Below are positions 1-50,573 of a stretch of DNA of 64,000 nt, piece by piece. Within the stretch, counting starts at the first letter, position 1. Every line of letters starts with the position of its first letter. The translations under genes were made by a program, and so were the position numbers. Origin of the DNA: Auanema rhodensis. Lineage: Eukaryota > Animalia > Nematoda. The stretch spans positions 14,136,001 through 14,200,000 of the forward strand of contig OZ059900.1 in assembly GCA_964057225.1 (NCBI GenBank). Direction: 5' to 3'. The notes under the pieces were generated by a model that was given only the letters and a program-made list of their open reading frames with translations, had not been told where the DNA came from and did no database searches.

Positions 1-538
1 ACGACTGAACGATTGACCTTGAAATGAAAAATCACCGTGACACGACAATTTTTCTCAAAAAATAAAAGAAAATTCATTAGTTTCCACACAATTGTCTAGG
101 TTATTGTCTAGTTCTAATCGAAGTAACAAGTAAGGTTGCAGATTCTGTTAGCTATGCTTTATTACTATATAACGTTTAAATACAATGCTGAATCTTTATG
201 CATTTCTAAACTAACTATGTTTGGTATCATTCTAACAAACTATTAAATGTATGCTTTTTTATATCAAGGGGGAACTTATATAAAGAATGAACGGAATGTC
301 ACGCCTACTGCTAAAACAAGATGGAAATCAAGAAGAACTGACTGGCTGATACGACCTTTACAGCATCTTCTTCACGAGTGAACAATTGGTCAACCAAGTT
401 GTATTAATTTTATAATTTTTACTTAACAAATAGTTCTGTGTTACCATAGATAATCGTTGTGCAAATACTAATTAGTGAATGAATCAGCAATCTCTAACTG
501 TTTCTGAGTTGGTTTCAGACTGCCTATTTCCTTTAATA

Positions 539-3500
539 ATGCTACACTTTTCACGTCTAATACCAATTCTGAGTATTTTATCATTATCAATAGCAGATGA
601 CGGATTTTATCGCACACTACTTTATGGAGAAAAATTAAAAGGATTTATTAAGGTAACATTTAATATATGAAATATTCAAATAAAAGCAAAATAACAAATG
701 TGTATCAGCTTGAATTTCATTTTTATTAAGGTAAATGAGCTCAAAAACGATAACTATGTTGTTTCTTTTGACATACAATTTTCGCAAAACGATGATGTCA
801 AATGGGCGCTGCATATGTCATCGGCACCGTATGATATGACAATCATGACCGATAATTGCAAACGAGTAAAAAAAAGTCCTCATCTCATGCGAAGTTTGCC
901 TTTGAATGAAACAATAGTGCCCGGTAATATATTGCATGGTCATACTATTGTTCTTAGTTCACAAATGGAGGTTTGAAATAGCTGATTGTTGATAAATCTT
1001 TATAAAACAGATTACACATAGGTATTAGCGTGTGCAACAATCATACTTCCAAAAAAACCTATTCTATCAGCTTCTTTTCATGCAGATATTTTTGAAGGTC
1101 ATATTCATGTTGTTCGTATGCTTGATAATCAAGTAAGTTTTATTTTAAGACAATAAAACTTCCACTATTGTAGGCTCGTTTGCTACCGGATTTACGTTAT
1201 CTAATGACTCTTGACGATTCAACTCTCTATAAGCAAACAATAGTTTGGGCATTTGTTGAAAACTGCTCTGAGAGTAATACAGATTCACTAACAGATGGAT
1301 CAGAGATTGGTATAGACTCTCGAACTACTATTACGACAGGTATATCGAAAGAGGGAAAAGTACATGTGAATTATAAGTTGCACATTTCAGAAGTTCCAAA
1401 TAATTATTCTCTTTATAACTTAGCCTTATATGCGGATTCAAAAGTTATAGCTTGCGTTCCCTTAGAAGATGTTGAACCTCGGACAGTTATGTCTGTTAAT
1501 CTAACACTAATTCAAGTATAGTTTTAATATTCAACAGAAAAAAAAACATTTCAAACACGTTACAGCGAAATCCATTTGAGCCTGTGTATTCAGAATCAGA
1601 ATTTCATCCTAACATTTTACATATTAGGCATGCTCATAAGTAAATATATCAGAAATAATTTTCTTTAAATCTTTAGAGACGATTGCTTGGATTTGTCAAC
1701 TGAATCCATACATAATGCGTTTGATAACTATTACCCTTCGGTAACCATTTTTGGAAGTGAAAGCATTATTTTGAAGGTTATATATATGTAATACATGTAT
1801 AACTTGTTTACTTTTAGTCATTGTATGCCGAAGATCTATGCAGTGTTCTTCGACCACATTTTCCACGCCCTGCTTCTACAACATATCTCATGCATCCGGT
1901 TAACGGCAGGTATTTGTTTTTCAGGATAACTATCAGTTCAAATGATTCAAAATGCAGAATAACACTACTTGATACAGAAGATGAGATTTTGGTAACAGGA
2001 GAGCTGCGCCATTCCTTAGAATCGTCTTCAAGTCGAGCCACAATACAGGTTTTTTTTATTTTTATAAATATGAATATGATAACGTTAGATAGTTACCAGA
2101 AATTTTTTTGAGCGACTAAGCAATACTGAACATTGACTAACTGCTTTGTTACAGTTTTCGTCGCAGTTAATTCGAGCTGATGCATGTACTGATGATGTTG
2201 TTTGTGTCGAATGTAAGGAAATAACTGATGTTGCTGTTATTGTTGGTAAAAATGAGAAAATGGGTTAGTTTGATTTTGAACATATGTTTCACTGAAGTTT
2301 GTTATACAGTTTCCCTTAGTGGAGTGATGAGTTGGTTCGACATACGAACTATTCGTTCTGCAATTATAGATCTTCAATGGACTAAGGTTTTGTCATTTTC
2401 TTTAAAATCATAAAACGTAGATTTGAAGATATGCTCGAATTTCACATATCTACCAAATGGTTCCATATCAGCACATGCTCTTATTAAGAGTTTATCCACT
2501 ACAACCAGCAAGACAGTCGCATCAATTGTTGCGATGGAATATCCCGCTAATAACTATACTGAAGTAATATAATCTATTAATATATCCATAAGTTATTTTA
2601 TATTTCTCAGGTTATTGTAAACAAGCGTCAAACATTTGACTCTGCTTATGCACGCACTAGACCAATAGATATGTCCATAACTAGTGGCCATCCGTGTGGC
2701 GAGCAAAACATTGGCCCTATCAAATCAGTTTTTTGGGCACCTCGTTTGGCTCAAATTTTATCTAGTACATCAAATGATACAAGGTAAAAGTAGAAACATA
2801 CATAATAATCTCATGAGCTATATACAGTGTCTTCATTTGGTTTAATATGATTACTGGGCCTATGAGTGTACTTGGAACATCTATTTTACTATCAGATGAG
2901 AATAAAATATTTTGTGGAGATTTCAAACCATTGGCTGAAAACACGGTTGCGATGGTGACGTTCAATTCATTGTTTCATGGATACATAAAAATGGTTAGAA
3001 ATTGATTTACTTACTAAGAATAAACTATATTATTGTAGACACAATATTTCACTTCAAATTGGGCATTCGGAATGCCTACTGAAGCGTACTACATGCTGAA
3101 TACAACAGGAAAGAAAAATAGACAGCTTACTTCAAAGCACTCGCAGGAAGTACTCAATAAAAGCGTTTTTTCCAATTTTTATCATTAATTAAGGAAATTA
3201 TTTGGGATATTGTGAAAGATGACTTCAAGTCTTGTGATACTGCTACTATTTTCAATCCTTTTGAAGTAGAGGTAAAAAACCCTATCTCTTACAAGCGTTT
3301 ACTGAGTTTTTAAAATTATCTTAGGATGCTTGTAATATCGAAACTATCGATTTTTGTCCATTAGGAAATGCAACAGCTAAGTCAAGATTATTACAAACTG
3401 GATCTCAATATCATATTTTGGTGAAAGATTTGCCTTTATCTGGTCCTTACTCAGGTTTCATTTTGTTTTCAATCACTAATTTTTCCTATATCATAATAGT

Positions 3501-4215
3501 AATTGGAAAATATCTGAGACTTCGATCTTCAAAAAACATCAGCATGGTAGAATGCCAACCTATTTATTTAATATCTGAGGTAAATTGTATAATAATATTG
3601 TGTACAACATTTAAGAAAAACCATTAATCATATTGTTGAACATGTTTAGACTACGTTCCGTTGGCAAGTTTCACAAAAAATTAATCTAAGAGAAGCACAA
3701 TTGGCTTTTGCATCAGCTGTAAATGTTCCAGAATACCAAGTAGCAATTACTTTAAGTAATAACTCAAAGTTTGTTTCCAGGTTGAAGTTGATTATACAAG
3801 AAAAACATTACAAGGAAATTGTGTTATATATAATATTAAACTACTTGGTAGGCTAAATTTAATATAATTCTATAATTCTATGACATTAATCAATTTCAAT
3901 TTGAAGCTATCTAGTAATTGTAATAATTACTAGATGGCTTCTATTCAAAAACGAAATTGTGCCGTTTTCAATTTTAGTTTAAACTAATTTTTAGCTGATG
4001 ATGGTTTAACCGCTCAAGTACAAGAAAGTTTTGATGTCGAACAGAATCATTTTATCAAAGGCCGTCCAGAAGAATGCAACATGGGTGATTTTTCATTATA
4101 TAATATATCTAATTCTTTATCGATTACTTCGTTGTCATCACCTCGTTTATTGATGAATAATGAGTATTATATTTTATATTTTATAATAATTTTATTGAAC
4201 ATTTTTATGATCTGA
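539..4215 (+). CDS. Secreted, probably GPI-anchored, degenerate Cu/Zn-SOD-fold repeat protein (CSRP/Rsod-like), multi-exon
   Basis: Starts with signal peptide MLHFSRLIPILSILSLSIA. The last repeat reads TFNSLFHGYIKMTQ...SCDTATIFNPFEVE..CNIETIDFCPLGNATAKSRLL...KDLPLSGPYSVIGKYLRL...ECQPI, which fits the SOD-repeat pattern (YNPF...C...C.GDLSGKHG...LPL.G..SIVGRS...CA.I). The final exon ends in a hydrophobic tail YYILYFIIILLNIFMI*, with TGA at 4213-4215. Confidence 0.6.
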
Positions 4216-4697: not shown

Positions 4698-6790
4698 ATG
4701 ACGAGATGCTATTGTGAAAGAATAATAGTTGTTTCACTGTTGTTCTTCCTTTCAGTAGTACAAAATGATCAGACTGTTGAAAATAATATGTGCTCAGGCG
4801 GTAAGTGATTGAGCTTGATCATCTTTATTTTTATTTTTAAAAATTGATAATAATATTCAACTTTTAGCTGAAATTACGTATGAAGCTACAAATGCTATTC
4901 AAAAACTAACTACACCAAATTATAATTTCGGCTTTTTGCCAAATAATTCAACATGCTCCATCATAATAAGAGCACCAGAAAATTCATCAGTTTGGATTAA
5001 AATAGAGCAGCTATCCATGGAACCACAACTATTCGATCAATGCTCGGATTTCATTAAAATTATAAATAGTTTGCTCTACATCATACATTTAGCGTATTTA
5101 CATATTTTCTTCAGCTTCATCGAAAACACCTCAAAAAGAAGACACCTTGGCAGTGTTGTGTGGTGCTGTAAACAATCGTCAAGTATTTTTTGTTTTCTTT
5201 CGATTTTGTTTATTTTTAAATTCAGTTTGTTTCGACAACTAATGTTTTAAGATTAGACATATTATCAGATATGCTAATTGAAAGCAAAGGAGCAGAAATT
5301 TCATATAGAGCTTTAGGTACCAAACTACACATATGGTATATCAATTTTATTTACAGAAAATAAGAAATGTGAAGATGGTTGGCATGAATTTAAGATGAAA
5401 TGTTTTTTTTTATCCGAAGAAAATAAAGAATTATCTTGGGTTGAAGCTCAAGTTTGCAAATTCTTAACTATTCAAGAACAACTATTTTCTAAATTACAGA
5501 GAGCATGTGTAGAGCAACAATCAAATCTAGCTTCAATTTCGCAATATACTGTGTATGAGGAAACATTAAGTGAGAATATAAAATAACATTTTTGTTATTA
5601 TCTTTACTAACAGATTGGCTAACTGAAGTGAATGCTAGTAAAACTTTATGGATTGGGATGCATGACGCTGTACAAGAAGGTGTTTTTGTTTCCATGAGTG
5701 GCAATCATGATTTTCCTTTCAATTGGGGGTATTCAAACTAACATTATCAGTTACATTCAATCGTTATTTAGTTCACCAAATAGTCTTCATAATAGTGATG
5801 TAAAAGATTGCTTATATCTAGATTCTCCCTTACATAATAGAACTGATGGGGATATGTTTCGTTTAGATGATTGTAGGAAAAAACGAGCGTTTTTATGTGA
5901 AAAATCAAAAGGTGATCCTCAAAGTGTTGTTAAATTTAATCTCTTTTCTCTCAGATGGAAAAACATGGACAGCTCCAGATCAGGAAGACATTGTTCGAAA
6001 TGGAGCCCAGTCTTGGAGTCTTGACCTAGCATTCTGGCTTTTATTTGCTTTAATACTTCTTCTCATAGCACTCATGTGTATTGCATGTGGATATGGTAAA
6101 TTCTAATGTAATTGGCAAATTTATCTTTATTCTAGCAATAACGCAAAAACAACGTCAAGCAAGAGTAAGTGCATTAGAAGGTCAGGGTAACCAAGCCCCA
6201 GCAAATACAATGTCAACAACTCCATCAGATCGTATTCAAATATGCTTTTTTATCTAGATTATTTCTTTGTTCTAGAACGTGCCGTTCGTCATCAACCAGA
6301 ACGAAGTGATACAATTCAAGAAACTGTAACTGAAGTACAAGATTTGATTGAAGTTCATTCAAGTTCACTTTACATCACTCACTACTTTTTGTAAATGTTT
6401 TTTTCAGATGATCATAAAATAAAAACGGAAGAGATACTTGACAAAAATATGAGAAATGTAGAAAGCGAAAAACATCCGCTTGAAATTAAAAGTACTGGAA
6501 ACGATTCTTTTCCTCTACATCAAGAATCTCCGAACCAAATTATTTATATTCGTGGAAAAGAGATTGCTGGCAATTATCAGGCAGGCACTAACAGTCGGGA
6601 AAGAACTTCGAATACATTTAACACTAGGTATGCTGTTTAATCGTTTAACAATATCGGATAAAATTTCAGAGATGAAAGTTTTTTGAAATCGAAAAAGGCT
6701 GCTGAGCTGTTTGGTCGTCCAAAAATGAATGTATTGGATAACGTGTCGGCCATATCGTTAGACGAATTTTGGAGTAATAAGCCTATGTAA
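4698..6790 (+). CDS. Type I membrane protein: signal peptide, CUB domain, C-type lectin domain, TM helix, cytoplasmic tail
   Basis: CUB-like segment TTPNY..FLPNNSTCSIIIRAPENSSVWIKIEQLSME...CSDFIKI. CTLD segment CEDGWHEFKMKCFF...SWVEAQRAC...LWIGMHDAVQEGVF...DDCRKKRAFLCEK. TM helix LAFWLLFALILLLIALMCIAC. Tail ends SLDEFWSNKPM*. Confidence 0.75.
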
Positions 6791-8503: not shown

Positions 8504-9623
8504 AGTCCTGAAAGCTTTAAAATTTTTTAAAAATAGTTCGTTTAAACACTTCTTTTAAAAATCAAACGTTTTTAACACTGAAAATAAAAGAACGATAAAA
8601 ATGAACGAATGAATAAAAACATATAAATTACAAATAACATTAAAAAGACATGTTATCTTTTTTAAAAATCTTTAACTTTTGCAATGCAATATAAAAAATG
8701 TTCTATATTTTTAATGTAAACGACTATTATTACTATCTAATTGTACCCTAGTGATCTACACGATGATAACAATGTTGAAAATAGTCATTTCTTGCGTTAC
8801 TCATCAAAACAAGACAACTGAGGTTGAATGGAAAATTTAATTTGAGATACGAACACTTGTTGCAACACGAAATCAATACAAAATGGTTACACAGAGTTTT
8901 GACAAAAATGGATGTAGCAATTCATGACCTTGAGATGAGGTAGTAGTAAAGCGAAGGTCATTACACCCCAGGGACAACCTTGATACAATTTTTATATGGA
9001 ATATGGTCTTGACCTAGCGATATAATTTATAACATGAGTTAATTCACTAAAGTCAGGGAAAGATAAGAAAAAAAGGTATTATCAATTACGAAAACAACCA
9101 GTAAATATACATAAAATTGCAATTCAAGATTAGTTGAAAAACCTACGAAAATCTTATATCTGTTTATGGCAATTTGATAAATGCATTTATCGTTTCAGTG
9201 AAGTTATATTGATTTCAAAAACATAGGATTCCGGATTTTGATCAAAAGTGTAATATCTAAATTAACTAATTAATACATAAGGCAAATTCATTCACAAAGG
9301 TTAGTTTTTTTTTTCATATTCCATAACTTATAGTGTATGTTATTTACAAAATAACCGGCAAAATATAAAAAATAACAGTTTTGAATTACAGTATACAATC
9401 AATAAATAACTCACTTTATTATTAATTTAGAGTTATATTATGATTATATGAAATCTTCAAGATTCAAACGCAATTTTGTGATAATTTAATTTTTGAAAGC
9501 TTTAAAAAGTTCATATGTTAAAAAATATTTTTATTCTTTGCATTTTAGCGTGTTTGAACATTTTTTGAGAACTTTATCAATATGTTCTAGGAGTTTTAAT
9601 TAGTTCTAAAAAAATTAGTACTC

Positions 9624-43362: not shown

Positions 43363-45420
43363 ATGCTATCTCTTCTTGCATTTGTTTTCTGTTGTAGTAT
43401 AGCGCAAGCTTATGATTCAAACACCCCTGTTGTTATCAAACTTCCAGCCGGTAATCATGTTAACTTTATGGTAAAAGAATTTCATTTAAATTGAAGGAAA
43501 TATTAATTGATTTCAGGCTGTACCACCAAAAGCAATCCCTACACCTGAAACTCAAAGACCAGTAAATCCAGTTGCAATGCCAGCACAGGCACAACAAGTT
43601 CCTACTGTAGTTGTTCCTCCTGCACATGCTACAGTTGCAGCTCAACAACCAGTTGTAATGCAGGCAGGAGCACCAGGAAGTCAAAGCTTCTCTGGACGTC
43701 AAGTATGTGCTATTAAACTTATTTCTCAGTAATTATCAATATTTCAGCCAAATGTTGTTGCTGGACCATCAGTGACTATTCCACCAGATGTTCAGAACCA
43801 ATTAATTAAATTTTTCGGTCTTGATTCCTTTGGAATTCCAGGACTTACCGGTAACCACCCACAGGGAATTGCAGGAGCTCTTCAAGAAATGAGAGCATCC
43901 GGAATTCCTGTCGCAGGAATCCCAAACAACAATGACGCTGCTACAAATAATGGTATTTTAACTACTTCAATAGTAAAAGTTACATATATAATTTAAGATG
44001 TTCTGGCTCAAGCCAACTCTAATTTCACTAACCAGCTCACACAAATGGCTGAACAAACCAAGAACCCTGGACCATATCATCCAGGAGGATCACTTCCACT
44101 TCCTGCTGATACACCAGGAGAGAACGGATTCATTGGACTTTTATCAAACTCAATCCGCAAACTTGTTAAAGACAGTAAGCTTGATGTTTAGAAAAAGCAT
44201 TTACAATTGTATTTAGCTGGTGTATCCGATGCTCTATCCAATTCTCTTCCTTCTATTCTTGGAACTGGATCTTCTGGTTCATCATCAGCGGCCTCATCCT
44301 CAGCAGCCGACATTTCTTCCTCCAACGATGCTGATCCAGTAAAACACGTAAAAGGAGAAAATATCAGACGCAAACCATCTTCATCTTCCCCCACTCAAGG
44401 AGTTTTGTCTGGAATCGCAGCTGCTCTCGGAGGAGGTGAGATCAAGTATAGGAACTTTTTAAAATGCAAAACAATTAGGTGGAAAAAACTCACCAACACA
44501 TGCTGGACTCCCAAGAATTCCTGGAATTCCTCTGTTACCCGGTGGTATCCCTCGTAACTCTGAAGGACAAATCGATGTTGTTCAATTGATCGGTAGTGAA
44601 CTTTTGTCAAAGTATTTCATTCATAGCTTATTTTAGGATCCGTTACAAAGCGTATCTCAAACGGAACCACGTTGGCTGATGTACTTCCACCTGAGCAATT
44701 GCAAACTTTGGCTGATAATGTTACTGATGCTCTTCTCCCTGATGTGCCAAACGATTTCGATTTCTCTAAATTTATGGGAAGATGGTTTGAAGGAGTTAAC
44801 TCACCCCGTGCTACCGAACAAAGATGTGTTGTTCATCACTGTAAATAGATACTTTATAATATTTCATTAATTGAAAACTATAGATGGCGGTTTGACTAAG
44901 AACGACAAAACAGCTACTTTCACAGCTTTGAAGATTTATCGAGAAGGTTCTGAGTTTGGCCCTGTCAAGTACTCTATCGGATACGCCTTCCGTGGTGGAA
45001 ACAAAAATGCTATGCTCACTCTCCACACTTCCGAAAACAGTGATACTCAACCATGTAACTCTTTATTTAAAAAATTAGCTTATCAAATGATACACGTTTA
45101 GTCTGGATTTACAAGCTTGGACCTGAAGGCAAGGATCCATTCGGAAATCCTCAATATGAATACGCCATTGTTTCTAATTGGGTCAAATATCCTGTTACTG
45201 TATTGGTTCGTGATCCCGACACTTTCAAAACAAAATATCAGAAAGAGGTTTTTTCATATTAAGTAAACATTCGCTTTATAATACGAAATTGCAGGTGTTG
45301 ATCTGGCTTGAGAAGGAAGGATTCGTAAATGGATTCATACGTGCTTTTAACATGTTGCAACCAGCCTCTTATTCCAGTTGTCAATACGCTGATAGTACTT
45401 TCGAAGTGTTCGGAAAATAG
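43363..45420 (+). CDS. lpr-3: Lipocalin-related apical ECM protein, copy 1
   Basis: Signal peptide; Pro/Gly-rich region PDVQNQLIKFFGLDSFGIPGLTGNHPQG; lipocalin core DFSKFMGRWFEG...YEYAIVSNW...VLVRDP. Confidence 0.85.
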
Positions 45421-46471: not shown

Positions 46472-48529
46472 ATGCTATCTCTTCTTGCATTTGTTTTCTG
46501 TTGTAGTATAGCGCAAGCTTATGATTCAAACACCCCTGTTGTTATCAAACTTCCAGCCGGTAATCATGTTAACTTTATGGTAAAAGAATTTCATTTAAAT
46601 TGAAGGAAATATTAATTGATTTCAGGCTGTACCACCAAAAGCAATCCCTACACCTGAAACTCAAAGACCAGTAAATCCAGTTGCAATGCCAGCACAGGCA
46701 CAACAAGTTCCTACTGTAGTTGTTCCTCCTGCACATGCTACAGTTGCAGCTCAACAACCAGTTGTAATGCAGGCAGGAGCACCAGGAAGTCAAAGCTTCT
46801 CTGGACGTCAAGTATGTGCTATTAAACTTATTTCTCAGTAATTATCAATATTTCAGCCAAATGTTGTTGCTGGACCATCAGTGACTATTCCACCAGATGT
46901 TCAGAACCAATTAATTAAATTTTTCGGTCTTGATTCCTTTGGAATTCCAGGACTTACCGGTAACCACCCACAGGGAATTGCAGGAGCTCTTCAAGAAATG
47001 AGAGCATCCGGAATTCCTGTCGCAGGAATCCCAAACAACAATGACGCTGCTACAAATAATGGTATTTTAACTACTTCAATAGTAAAAGTTACATATATAA
47101 TTTAAGATGTTCTGGCTCAAGCCAACTCTAATTTCACTAACCAGCTCACACAAATGGCTGAACAAACCAAGAACCCTGGACCATATCATCCAGGAGGATC
47201 ACTTCCACTTCCTGCTGATACACCAGGAGAGAACGGATTCATTGGACTTTTATCAAACTCAATCCGCAAACTTGTTAAAGACAGTAAGCTTGATGTTTAG
47301 AAAAAGCATTTACAATTGTATTTAGCTGGTGTATCCGATGCTCTATCCAATTCTCTTCCTTCTATTCTTGGAACTGGATCTTCTGGTTCATCATCAGCGG
47401 CCTCATCCTCAGCAGCCGACATTTCTTCCTCCAACGATGCTGATCCAGTAAAACACGTAAAAGGAGAAAATATCAGACGCAAACCATCTTCATCTTCCCC
47501 CACTCAAGGAGTTTTGTCTGGAATCGCAGCTGCTCTCGGAGGAGGTGAGATCAAGTATAGGAACTTTTTAAAATGCAAAACAATTAGGTGGAAAAAACTC
47601 ACCAACACATGCTGGACTCCCAAGAATTCCTGGAATTCCTCTGTTACCCGGTGGTATCCCTCGTAACTCTGAAGGACAAATCGATGTTGTTCAATTGATC
47701 GGTAGTGAACTTTTGTCAAAGTATTTCATTCATAGCTTATTTTAGGATCCGTTACAAAGCGTATCTCAAACGGAACCACGTTGGCTGATGTACTTCCACC
47801 TGAGCAATTGCAAACTTTGGCTGATAATGTTACTGATGCTCTTCTCCCTGATGTGCCAAACGATTTCGATTTCTCTAAATTTATGGGAAGATGGTTTGAA
47901 GGAGTTAACTCACCCCGTGCTACCGAACAAAGATGTGTTGTTCATCACTGTAAATAGATACTTTATAATATTTCATTAATTGAAAACTATAGATGGCGGT
48001 TTGACTAAGAACGACAAAACAGCTACTTTCACAGCTTTGAAGATTTATCGAGAAGGTTCTGAGTTTGGCCCTGTCAAGTACTCTATCGGATACGCCTTCC
48101 GTGGTGGAAACAAAAATGCTATGCTCACTCTCCACACTTCCGAAAACAGTGATACTCAACCATGTAACTCTTTATTTAAAAAATTAGCTTATCAAATGAT
48201 ACACGTTTAGTCTGGATTTACAAGCTTGGACCTGAAGGCAAGGATCCATTCGGAAATCCTCAATATGAATACGCCATTGTTTCTAATTGGGTCAAATATC
48301 CTGTTACTGTATTGGTTCGTGATCCCGACACTTTCAAAACAAAATATCAGAAAGAGGTTTTTTCATATTAAGTAAACATTCGCTTTATAATACGAAATTG
48401 CAGGTGTTGATCTGGCTTGAGAAGGAAGGATTCGTAAATGGATTCATACGTGCTTTTAACATGTTGCAACCAGCCTCTTATTCCAGTTGTCAATACGCTG
48501 ATAGTACTTTCGAAGTGTTCGGAAAATAG
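46472..48529 (+). CDS. lpr-3: Lipocalin-related apical ECM protein, copy 2 (appears identical to copy 1)
   Basis: Same sequence as 43363-45420 shifted by 3109. Confidence 0.82.
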
Positions 48530-49281: not shown

Positions 49282-50573
49282 ATGATGCTATATCCCAGTT
49301 TGTTGGCTGCTTTATTTTTCATAAGTTCTGTCAATGCAATAGGAGAAAATGCTGTAAGTCATATATTTGCTGAAACGTTTATGCGTATGTTCAAATGCAC
49401 AAAGTGTTATTCTAAAGCTTTTTCATATTAACTATTTTACAGATGAATATTAATGCCATTACCGGTATAATAGGTGGTATTGGAAAGATGTTGGATAGTA
49501 AAATGGAAACAATCAACATTCCTACTGACTTGTTAATGGGAAAATGGTTCCAGGTCTAGTTCATAGCATTTGAAAAAACTTAAAATACCAATAAGTTCAG
49601 ATTTATAAAGCTTCTGTTAATTTTGATAACGTGCGAAATCAAATATATTGTCCCGTTTCTTATTGTAAGTTTTTAATCATATTCTAATAAACTAAACAAA
49701 TTATTAGTTTCACCAAACCCTATCATGGGAGAAGATGGATTCTCAATGGAGGAATCTTTTAGAGTTGTTTCTAAAAATGGACCAATTGAGACATATAAAA
49801 GGGATGTTAGTAAAGTAGGACCAGGACAGTACTGGCTTTATACCGAAGAGTACTTTTATCCAAAGCAATGTATGAATGCATTCCAAAAACAAGATTTTAA
49901 TATAAATTTGATTTAGTCAACATAATCGGATGCGGTCCTTCTTTTGTCAACAACACAAACGCTACATCTGAAGATGTTCAATATATAATTGCTACTGACT
50001 CAGGAAGAATGTCTTTATCTGTCTATGCGCGCGAACCAAATGTCTTCTTCCAGGTTTCTTTTATATATAGTTGTTTATATTGCGTGATATTTTTCAATTA
50101 TATTTTTATTAGACTTTTCAAGGTCAGAGAACACTCTCATCCAGTGTATTATTTAGGTCAAAAGTCAGCAAAATCGTGAAGAAATAACCTATATTACTTG
50201 CTTTGTCACCATATTACACTTTTTCTTTCAGGAATATAATAAAGAAGTTACTGAATTTATGGAGAGCAAAGGATTTGGAGGACGTGTCTTCTGGAACAGC
50301 CCAAAACCAGTATACCAAGGACCCGATTGTGATTGGCCTACCGAGAAAGAAGTTTTTGCAAGAAGGTAAGTAAAGAATGAATTATAATCAATGTTTTCAA
50401 AATTTTGTAGGGTTCTGAAAAATCAAGAAATATCGGAACAAGCCAAGAAGGAAGCTGCTAACCCTCAAAAGGAATCACATGTTCCAACCAGTGGACTGTC
50501 TTTATCTGATATGCTTCGTGATCCAAAATCCACATGGGAACGCCTTGTTGGTCCATTGTCTTTGAACAATTAG
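49282..50573 (+). CDS. Lipocalin-related protein, LPR-4/5/6 type
   Basis: Signal peptide MMLYPSLLAALFFISSVNA; LMGKWFQIYKA; GPGQYWLYTEEYFYPKQ; YIIATDSGRMSLSVYAREP. Confidence 0.85.

What the first reader, a model, noticed from the sequence alone, without database searches (positions are those of the whole stretch)
539..4215. Cell-surface SOD-repeat (CSRP/Rsod-like) protein whose copper histidines appear lost: a candidate nematode pseudo-enzyme
Seen in sequence: a long spliced protein with a signal peptide, a C-terminal hydrophobic GPI-type tail and several units that look like Cu-SOD beta-barrels (GEKLKGFIKV..KWALH..; FHADIFEGHIHV..; FNSLFHGYIKMTQ..). The last unit matches the repeat pattern best: TIFNPFEV..C...FCPLGNATAKS...DLPLSGPYSVIGKYLRLR...ECQPI. 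Established knowledge: CSRP/Rsod proteins are secreted, GPI-anchored tandem Cu-only SOD repeats with HxH, GHYNP, GDLSGKHG and SIVIH motifs. Inference: in the last unit those His sites read LFWDI, TIFNP, GNATAKS and YLRLR while Cys and the fold residues are kept, so it is probably a catalytically dead scaffold. An FTZ-F1/NHR-25-type TGACCTTGA lies upstream at 14-22, hinting at an epidermal or apical-matrix role. I am not aware of a characterised nematode member.
Basis: partly seen in the sequence, partly recalled or inferred. Interest (0 to 1): 0.75.

Follow-up and report, generated by a model that had tools for sequence, protein, structure and literature searches.

The report
Copper-less nematode CSRP/Rsod orthologue
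This roundworm gene encodes a cell-surface protein built from six copies of the superoxide-dismutase barrel, none with its copper site; it appears to be the counterpart of the CSRP/Rsod protein that a 2026 review says has not been identified in nematodes.

Summary
Window 539-4215 (+) is one 19-exon GT-AG gene of 882 codons. It has an N-terminal signal-like segment and a hydrophobic C-terminal tail.

- **Orthology:** it is the single-copy orthologue (about 45% identity) of C. elegans F47G3.1, an uncharacterised family with no Pfam match, seen so far in rhabditid nematodes.
- **Fold:** AlphaFold models of two orthologues show the SOD fold. The last repeat matches the Cu-only SOD5 of Candida albicans (Z 15.0). 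Repeats 1, 2 and 5 match SOD or CCS domain II (Z 9.2-9.9).
- **Link to CSRP/Rsod:** a profile of the nematode family aligns end to end with insect Rsod (hhalign 95.9%, E 6e-9; reversed control 0.4%). Seventeen near-invariant Cys columns are shared, and the window protein has Cys at all 17.
- **Copper site:** the loops and histidines that form it are deleted or replaced in every repeat, so canonical SOD chemistry is very unlikely.

A 2026 review states that no CSRP has been identified in Nematoda. I read this as a copper-less, loop-trimmed variant of a known family, probably a GPI-anchored non-catalytic scaffold.

The NHR-25 site and epidermal role are not supported. The joined spliced protein was never searched or folded; full-length orthologues stood in for it.

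The parts
539..4215 (+). Whole coding region: 19 exons, 882 codons plus stop
   Evidence: Phase-consistent GT-AG model, collinear with orthologues. The family profile hits only these exons in the whole genome.
539..652 (+). Exon 1: start codon, signal-like segment (about 539-595), start of repeat 1
731..970 (+). Exon 2 (repeat 1 core, Cys codon at 857)
1022..1132 (+). Exon 3: end of repeat 1 (VLACATI, Cys 1031) and start of repeat 2, with His codons at 1079, 1100 and 1106
1174..1515 (+). Exon 4 (repeat 2, Cys 1264 and 1453; start of repeat 3)
1566..1639 (+). Exon 5 (repeat 3)
1677..1776 (+). Exon 6, corrected 3' end (repeat 3; includes SVTIFGSESIILK)
1818..2048 (+). Exon 7 (end of repeat 3, start of repeat 4)
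2155..2263 (+). Exon 8 (repeat 4)
2310..2386 (+). Exon 9 (repeat 4)
2429..2563 (+). Exon 10 (end of repeat 4, start of repeat 5)
2611..2783 (+). Exon 11: repeat 5. Reads ARTRP where insects have YHIHxTP
2828..2993 (+). Exon 12: end of repeat 5 (SVLGTSILLS..FCGDF) and start of repeat 6
3039..3149 (+). Exon 13 (repeat 6)
3194..3271 (+). Exon 14 (repeat 6: EIIWDI, TIFNP)
3325..3454 (+). Exon 15 (repeat 6: FCPLGNATAKS, LPLSGPYS)
3500..3579 (+). Exon 16 (repeat 6: IGKYLRLRS, ECQPI)
3650..3739 (+). Exon 17 (C-terminal alpha/beta domain)
3781..3847 (+). Exon 18 (C-terminal domain)
3995..4215 (+). Exon 19: end of the C-terminal domain, Ser-rich linker, hydrophobic tail (about 4165-4212), stop
617..1060 (+). 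SOD-like repeat 1 (genomic span, introns included)
   Evidence: Mapped from C. elegans residues 38-145. In the Necator model this repeat matches CCS domain II at Z 9.2.
1061..1467 (+). SOD-like repeat 2
   Evidence: Mapped. Matches SOD5 at Z 9.2.
1468..1859 (+). Repeat 3, heavily truncated (about 83 aa against 178 in insects)
   Evidence: Low pLDDT in the model, so the fold is not verified.
1860..2461 (+). Repeat 4
   Evidence: 59% to insect R4. No SOD structural match was obtained for it on its own.
2462..2930 (+). Repeat 5
   Evidence: C. elegans model residues 455-579 match CCS domain II at Z 9.9. The copper ligands are lost.
2931..3664 (+). Repeat 6, the best-preserved SOD barrel
   Evidence: Z 15.0 to SOD5. 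Profile against PDB SOD, E 0.0014. hhalign 88-97% to insect R3-R6.
3665..4089 (+). C-terminal alpha/beta domain with two conserved Cys
   Evidence: A weak SEA-domain resemblance, Z 5.4, is a lead only.
14..22 (+). TGACCTTGA 9-mer, 517 bp upstream of the ATG
   Evidence: Present; 3 copies in the window against 0.47 expected. No functional evidence.

Best explanation
The gene encodes the nematode counterpart of the animal Cu-only SOD repeat protein (CSRP, called Rsod in insects). The protein has a signal peptide, six tandem SOD-type beta-barrels each pinned by the family's conserved disulfide cysteines, a small C-terminal alpha/beta domain, a Ser-rich stalk and a GPI-type hydrophobic tail.

Compared with insect Rsod, the nematode proteins have lost the loops and histidines that build the copper site in every repeat. 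The protein therefore cannot dismutate superoxide through the canonical site.

It most likely works as a non-catalytic, GPI-anchored extracellular scaffold or binding module. The precedent is CCS domain II, a SOD-fold domain that lacks the catalytic site and is used for protein docking.

What is shown:
- the gene model
- orthology to F47G3.1
- the SOD fold in repeats 1, 2, 5 and 6
- collinear homology to Rsod
- loss of the copper ligands

What is inferred:
- GPI anchoring
- absence of any metal binding
- the scaffold or binding role
For: - **Gene model and orthologues:**. About 45% identity to C. elegans F47G3.1. Single copy in the genome.
- **Fold, C. elegans model:** residues 581-759 match C. 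albicans Cu-only SOD5 at Z 15.0, rmsd 3.1 over 130 aa, and human SOD1 at Z about 14. Residues 455-579 match yeast CCS domain II at Z 9.9.
- **Fold, Necator model:** in an unbiased scan of 48,161 chains the top 14 hits were all SOD fold. Repeat 1 scored Z 9.2 and repeat 2 Z 9.2 to SOD5. The Foldseek hits of the full-length C. elegans model given probability 1.00 were all Cu/Zn SOD.
- **Sequence, SOD level:** the family profile against PDB sequences has Cu/Zn SOD as its top hit, E 0.0014.
- **Sequence, Rsod level:** the only non-nematode hit of a 5.8-billion-sequence search was bee Rsod, E 0.058. hhalign against insect Rsod gave 95.9%, E 6.2e-9, over 756 columns spanning both families end to end. 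The reversed control gave 0.4%.
- **Cysteines:** 17 of 18 Cys columns are shared and near-invariant in both families, and all 17 are Cys in the window protein.
- **ESM Atlas:** 29 of the 30 nearest clusters are roughly 1000-1140 aa Sod_Cu proteins (a lead).
- **Ligand loss:** insect repeat 5 H707, H709 and H794 map to T/Q, H (R in the window) and K/S, and GHWNP is deleted. Repeat 6 reads W-x-I, FNP and RLR.
- **No other CSRP here:** neither PF00080 nor the insect Rsod profile finds another CSRP in this genome.
- **The protein is made:** the orthologue was detected as protein in Litoditis marina (PMC9025465).
Against: - No member passes Pfam Sod_Cu; full-length orthologues give zero Pfam hits.
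- Repeat by repeat, only repeat 6 is strongly significant against insect repeats. Repeats 1, 4 and 5 are moderate (59-86%, and repeat 5's best partner is insect R1). Repeats 2, 3 and the C-terminal domain are not significant alone.
- Repeat 3 is modelled at pLDDT below 50, and repeat 4 has no SOD structural hit of its own.
- Cys-Cys pairing is partly favoured by the aligner's scoring.
- The window's own joined protein was not folded or searched; the structures are of orthologues that are roughly 45% identical to the window protein.
- The signal peptide and GPI signal rest on hydropathy only.
- Conserved nematode-specific histidines, notably H152/H159/H161 in repeat 2, leave room for a non-canonical metal site.
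- There are no expression or localisation data for this species.
Confidence: 0.8

Rival explanations
1. The protein is still a metalloprotein, possibly redox-active, through a new site. The nematode-specific invariant histidines on strands 1 and 2 of repeat 2 (ASFH..GHxH; window codons at 1079, 1100, 1106) would form an H-x-H plus H site on neighbouring strands. Carbonic anhydrase and the SOD copper site itself use this geometry.
For: H152 and H161 are invariant, and H159 is His in 16 of 17 sequences. All three are present in the window protein, and insect Rsod does not conserve His at these columns (S/T; N/Y; 3 of 15 His at the H161 column). The i/i+2 plus adjacent-strand arrangement follows from the SOD strand order; that step is inference.
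Against: Model coordinates could not be inspected, so the geometry is untested. By alignment to SOD1 these positions lie on the outer face used for dimer contacts, so they could equally be a domain interface. No known SOD-fold protein uses this site.
Confidence: 0.12
2. The family is an independent nematode invention: tandem duplication of an ordinary extracellular Cu/Zn SOD followed by decay. On this view it only resembles CSRP/Rsod by convergence.
For: Repeats 2, 3 and the C-terminal domain show no significant similarity to insect repeats on their own. There is no Pfam hit.
Against: The global alignment is collinear over 756 columns with six-for-six repeats, 17 shared Cys columns and a matching C-terminal extension. 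The best structural match is a Cu-only SOD, not SOD1 or EC-SOD. The only cross-phylum sequence hit is Rsod. Nearest clusters in ESM Atlas are CSRP-sized Sod_Cu proteins.
Confidence: 0.05
3. The region is not a functional gene: a pseudogene, or several unrelated genes.
For: None beyond the lack of transcript data for this species.
Against: The frame is open across 19 phase-consistent exons. Orthologues are full length and conserved, with 40-65% identity among genera. Orthologue protein was detected in Litoditis marina.
Confidence: 0.02

Closest known systems
Animal Cu-only SOD repeat proteins (CSRP; Rsod/CG31028 in Drosophila, BmSOD6, fish CUSR, amphibian SOD4)
   Same: Secreted or GPI-type architecture. 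Six tandem SOD barrels with short linkers and a conserved disulfide pair in each repeat. The N-terminal repeats lack copper. Collinear profile alignment (95.9%, E 6e-9), with 17 shared Cys columns and an aligned C-terminal extension.
   Different: About 870-886 aa against about 1130 aa, because the loops carrying the copper-site elements are trimmed, most severely in repeat 3. No repeat keeps the four His ligands or the E110/D113 signature. It fails Pfam Sod_Cu. It is found in a phylum where the review PMC13017621 says no CSRP has been identified.
Fungal Cu-only SOD5 (Candida albicans; PDB 4n3t, 5kbl)
   Same: Best structural match of repeat 6 (Z 15.0). Extracellular and GPI-anchored, with no Zn site or electrostatic loop.
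   Different: SOD5 is a single-domain active enzyme with copper ligands His75, His77, His93 and His153 (numbering from my own knowledge, not checked here). The nematode repeat reads W-x-I, FNP and R at the equivalent positions.
Domain II of the copper chaperone for SOD (CCS; PDB 1ej8, 1jk9)
   Same: A SOD-fold domain without a catalytic copper site, used for protein-protein docking. It is the best structural match of repeats 1 and 5 (Z 9.2 and 9.9).
   Different: CCS is cytosolic, has a single SOD-like domain and has flanking metal-binding domains. No specific sequence relationship was found.
Canonical nematode Cu/Zn SODs (sod-1, sod-4 and sod-5 type)
   Same: The same fold superfamily. This genome has them on contigs C3 and C5.
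   Different: They are single-domain, pass Pfam Sod_Cu at 54-71 bits per exon and keep the metal ligands. The gene studied here is not hit by that model at all.

Membership tests
CSRP / Rsod (Cu-only SOD repeat proteins) | Four to twelve (usually six) tandem SOD-fold beta-barrel repeats joined by short linkers | tested here: met
   Six units are collinear with the six of insect Rsod. The SOD fold was verified in orthologue models for repeats 1, 2, 5 and 6. Repeat 3 is low-confidence and repeat 4 was not matched individually.
CSRP / Rsod (Cu-only SOD repeat proteins) | Conserved intradomain disulfide cysteine pair in each repeat | tested here: met
   17 Cys columns are shared with insect Rsod, near-invariant in both families, and all are Cys in the window protein. 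The disulfide bonding itself is inferred.
CSRP / Rsod (Cu-only SOD repeat proteins) | Significant sequence homology to known CSRP/Rsod | tested here: met
   hhalign of nematode against insect profiles: 95.9%, E 6.2e-9, 756 columns. The reversed control gave 0.4%. Bee Rsod was the only non-nematode hit, E 0.058.
CSRP / Rsod (Cu-only SOD repeat proteins) | No Zn site and no extended electrostatic loop | tested here: met
   The best structural match is Cu-only SOD5. In the SOD alignment the Zn-loop ligand positions are not His or Asp. Most repeats are only about 83-126 aa; repeat 6 is about 150 aa (186 aa in the C. elegans model, which carries an extra insertion).
CSRP / Rsod (Cu-only SOD repeat proteins) | Secretion signal and GPI anchor, or secreted form | tested here: inconclusive
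   Hydropathy shows a signal-like N-terminus and a terminal 16-residue hydrophobic tail after a Ser-rich stretch. Orthologues end the same way. SignalP and NetGPI were not available.
CSRP / Rsod (Cu-only SOD repeat proteins) | At least one repeat with an intact copper site (four His) and the E110/D113 signature | tested here: not met
   The repeat 5 ligands map to T/Q, H (R in the window) and K/S, and GHWNP is deleted. The EMGD signature has no counterpart. Repeat 6 lacks them too. It is therefore a homologue of the family but not a Cu-only SOD in the enzymatic sense.
Pfam Sod_Cu (PF00080) | Score above the gathering threshold (28.9 bits) | tested here: not met
   No hit for any exon, for full-length orthologues, or in the six-frame scan of the genome at this locus.
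Pfam Sod_Cu (PF00080) | Eight-stranded Greek-key SOD barrel | tested here: met
   Structural matches of Z 9.2-15.0 to SOD-fold chains, which rank above all other folds.

The most novel reading that the evidence does not exclude
The conserved core function of CSRP/Rsod across animals is not superoxide dismutation. It would instead be a copper-independent job at the cell surface, such as scaffolding, adhesion or ligand binding. Nematodes would show this by keeping the six-barrel, disulfide-locked architecture under purifying selection after discarding every copper site, and perhaps by gaining a new three-histidine site on repeat 2. C. elegans F47G3.1 would then be the first genetically tractable entry point to a protein family whose function is still described as unknown (PMC9524095).
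Probability: 0.3. Interest if true: 0.75.

Novelty: new variant of a known kind. Interest (0 to 1): 0.6.

Why it matters
CSRP/Rsod is an ancient, widespread animal protein whose function is still unknown. Recent surveys and a 2026 review state that none has been identified in nematodes, flatworms or rotifers.

Nematodes appear to keep a single-copy, well-conserved orthologue that has lost all its copper sites. Three things follow:
- It fills a reported gap in the family's phylogenetic range.
- It argues that the six-barrel scaffold has value independent of catalysis.
- It names a C. elegans gene (F47G3.1) in which that function can be tested by knock-out, reporter and rescue experiments.

It is also a warning for domain-based surveys, because the family is invisible to Pfam.

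Tried and rejected
- **Pfam, exon by exon:** only chance-level hits.
- **PF00080 over the whole genome:** finds only the ordinary SOD genes.
- **Insect Rsod profile over the genome in six frames:** nothing at this locus and no other CSRP.
- **hhalign among the nematode repeats themselves:** only weak matches, P 0.006-0.07, though always in the C-terminal-motif register.
- **Repeat-by-repeat hhalign against insect repeats:** does not give a clean diagonal, so one-to-one repeat orthology rests on the global alignment and not on single repeats.
- **Foldseek on the two-repeat model:** no hit at E <= 0.001; the VIA wide scan was needed.
- **ESM Atlas, unnamed clusters:** nothing usable.
- **NHR-25/FTZ-F1 idea:** one 9-mer upstream, 3 in the window against 0.47 expected, with 1 of 100 shuffles reaching 3. 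Conservation could not be tested, so I do not adopt it.
- **Tan et al. 2025 table entry 'Nematoda: Lineus':** Lineus is a bootlace worm, which is a nemertean, so this is not prior art for nematodes.
- **Joined spliced protein:** Exons were searched by reference and full-length orthologues were used instead.
Full report
**Gene model**

Reading the region and checking phases by script gives a 19-exon gene on the + strand, from the ATG at 539 to the stop at 4213-4215. Every intron is GT-AG. Aligning the exon translations to full-length orthologues showed that exon 6 reads through my first donor and ends at 1776, adding SVTIFGSESIILK, which all orthologues have. The corrected model is 2649 nt, 882 codons, with introns of 37-147 nt.

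The first 19 residues are signal-like. The last 16 are strongly hydrophobic, end the protein and follow a Ser-rich stretch. Orthologues end the same way. This pattern fits a GPI signal, but no dedicated predictor was available.

The joined protein was never sent to a search or a fold; full-length orthologues returned by the tools stood in for it.

**Relatives**

- Pfam sees nothing in any exon.
- The Sod_Cu model scanned over the 181-Mb genome finds only the ordinary SOD genes on other contigs.
- phmmer with exon 4 against 1.84 billion representatives found six proteins, three of them nearly full length (770-867 aa).
- A word-indexed search from one of these defined the family. It contains C. 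elegans F47G3.1 (NP_508432.1, 886 aa), other Caenorhabditis, strongylids, Mesorhabditis and Pristionchus. Nearly all are named uncharacterised or hypothetical, apart from a few evidently spurious automatic names, and the only precomputed Pfam domains belong to a fused neighbouring gene.
- Full-length members also give no Pfam hit.
- The window protein is about 45% identical to F47G3.1 over about 805 aligned positions.
- The family profile hits only this locus in the genome, so the gene is single copy.
- In the literature F47G3.1 is listed only as 'unknown function' (PMC2689271). Its Litoditis marina orthologue was detected at protein level (PMC9025465).

**Fold**

| Model | Region | Best match | Z |
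|---|---|---|---|
| C. elegans F47G3.1 (17-sequence alignment, mean pLDDT 70) | residues 581-759 (repeat 6) | C. albicans Cu-only SOD5 | 15.0 (rmsd 3.1, 130 aa) |
| same | residues 581-759 | human SOD1 | about 14 (20-23% identity) |
| same | residues 455-579 (repeat 5) | yeast CCS domain II | 9.9 |
| Necator fragment, repeats 1-2 (pLDDT 74) | repeat 1 | CCS domain II | 9.2 |
| same | repeat 1 | human SOD1 | 8.6 |
| same | repeat 2 | SOD5 | 9.2 |

- For the C. elegans model, the Foldseek hits given probability 1.00 are all Cu/Zn SODs.
- For the Necator model, the top 14 of 48,161 chains scanned without any prefilter were all SOD fold. Among other folds, one DUF3244 beta-sandwich reached Z 7.8 and the generic Ig-like folds start at Z 6.7.
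- Repeat 3 is modelled at pLDDT below 50.
- Repeat 4 gave only generic beta-sandwich matches, because each SOD chain is reported once at its best domain.

The fold is therefore shown for four of the six units.

**Link to CSRP/Rsod**

- The family profile against PDB sequences has a Cu/Zn SOD as its top hit (3ce1, E 0.0014), covering repeat 6.
- A search with repeats 5-6 of the Pristionchus protein returned, outside nematodes, a single protein: bee Rsod, E 0.058 for a 5.8-billion-sequence database.
- hhalign of the nematode alignment against that one sequence gave 91%, E 1e-6.
- Against a 15-species insect Rsod alignment it gave 95.9%, E 6.2e-9, over 756 columns running from repeat 1 to the C-terminal domain of both families. 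The same run with the insect alignment reversed gave 0.4%, E 0.15.
- In that alignment 17 of the 18 Cys of each reference protein pair up. All 17 columns are invariant or nearly so in both families, and all are Cys in the window protein. Shuffling aligned partners gives 0.4 expected pairs, although the aligner itself favours Cys-Cys matches.
- ESM Atlas gave 29 of 30 nearest clusters as roughly 1000-1140 aa Sod_Cu proteins. This is a lead, not a test.

One caveat applies. Taken one at a time, only repeat 6 is strongly similar to insect repeats (88-97% to R3-R6). Repeats 1 and 4 reach 67% and 59% on the diagonal, and repeat 5 matches insect R1 (86%) and R4 (54%). Repeats 2, 3 and the C-terminal domain are not significant alone. 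Homology of the whole protein to Rsod is well supported; strict repeat-for-repeat orthology is likely but not proven.

**Copper site**

Among the six insect repeats, I found the full pattern only in repeat 5: YHIH, GHWNP, VVIH and EMGDLSGK.

| Insect repeat 5 element | Nematode family | Window protein |
|---|---|---|
| H707 | T/Q/S/E | Y |
| H709 | H in 15 of 16 | R |
| GHWNP | deleted | deleted |
| H794 | K/S/G/T | S |
| E-x-G-D signature | no counterpart | no counterpart |

- Repeat 6 reads W-x-I, FNP and R-L-R at the ligand positions.
- The nematode repeats are shorter than the insect ones, mainly where the active-site loops lie: repeat 3 is 83 aa against 178, repeat 4 is 119 against 177, and repeat 5 is 126 against 157.
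- No repeat retains a canonical site.
- Neither PF00080 nor the insect profile finds another CSRP in the genome.

**What it probably does**

The architecture is kept under clear constraint: a single copy, 17 fixed cysteines, and 40-65% identity between genera. The chemistry, however, is gone. The most economical reading is a non-catalytic, GPI-anchored extracellular scaffold or binding module, comparable in principle to CCS domain II, which repeats 1 and 5 resemble most closely.

One observation keeps a rival open. Three nematode-specific histidines on strands 1-2 of repeat 2 are invariant or nearly so (ASFH..GHxH) and are kept in the window protein. Their i, i+2 plus neighbouring-strand arrangement is a classic metal-binding geometry. 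I could not inspect model coordinates, so this remains inference.

**Novelty**

- The 2026 review of the family states that no CSRP has been identified in Nematoda, Platyhelminthes or Rotifera (PMC13017621).
- A 19-species survey that included C. elegans describes no C. elegans Rsod in the passages I read, and calls Rsod's function unknown (PMC9524095).
- The 'Nematoda: Lineus' entry in Tan et al. 2025 refers to a bootlace worm, which is a nemertean.

I therefore class this as a new, copper-less, loop-trimmed variant of a known family, in a phylum thought to lack it.

**Not supported or not testable**

- TGACCTTGA at 14-22 is real, but it is a single 9-mer. There are 3 in the window against 0.47 expected, and 1 of 100 shuffles reaches 3.
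- Nothing here bears on an epidermal role.
I did not check this; it would fit a rhabditid.

Noticed in passing
window 1079-1108 (exon 3): Three histidines in repeat 2 (ASFH..GHIH) are invariant or nearly so across the nematode family and are not conserved as His in insect Rsod. They form an H-x-H plus neighbouring-strand pattern that could be a new metal site or a domain interface.
   Followed up: partly
window 4698-6100 (+): The next gene downstream starts with a signal-like exon and has a CUB-like exon (Pfam CUB E 6e-4, 20.5 bits, just under the cut-off) and a C-type-lectin-looking stretch (WIGMHD...). Two Caenorhabditis gene models of the F47G3.1 orthologue are fused to CUB plus Lectin_C domains, so the neighbourhood looks conserved and those models are probably mergers of two genes.
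   Followed up: partly
window 44207-44557 and 47316-47666 (+): Two ORFs with identical 116-aa translations, Ser-rich, lie about 3.1 kb apart. This looks like a recent tandem duplication.
   Followed up: no
window 1620-1690 (exon 5/6 junction): The window protein reads LHIRHAHKDDCLD where all orthologues read LHIRDDCLD. The four extra residues (HAHK) depend on the 37-nt intron chosen, and no alternative GT donor restores the shorter form.
   Followed up: partly
P0010 (C. elegans NP_508432.1) residues about 626-661: The C. elegans reference protein has an insertion of about 35-40 residues in repeat 6. It is absent from all other species and modelled as low-confidence helix. It may be a retained intron in the gene model or a species-specific insert.
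   Followed up: no
C. elegans model residues 757-838; window 3665-4089: The membrane-proximal C-terminal domain is alpha/beta with two conserved Cys. Its best structural match is weak: the SEA domain of a mouse transmembrane protease, Z 5.4. It lines up with the C-terminal extension of insect Rsod in the global alignment but is not significant on its own.
   Followed up: partly
window 8925-8933 (+) and 50118-50126 (-): There are two further copies of TGACCTTGA in the window. The total of three compares with 0.47 expected.
   Followed up: no
PMC12217663, Table 1: The table of CSRP distribution lists 'Nematoda - Anopla - Lineus'. Lineus is a bootlace worm, which is a nemertean, so the entry is a labelling slip and not a nematode CSRP.
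   Followed up: yes
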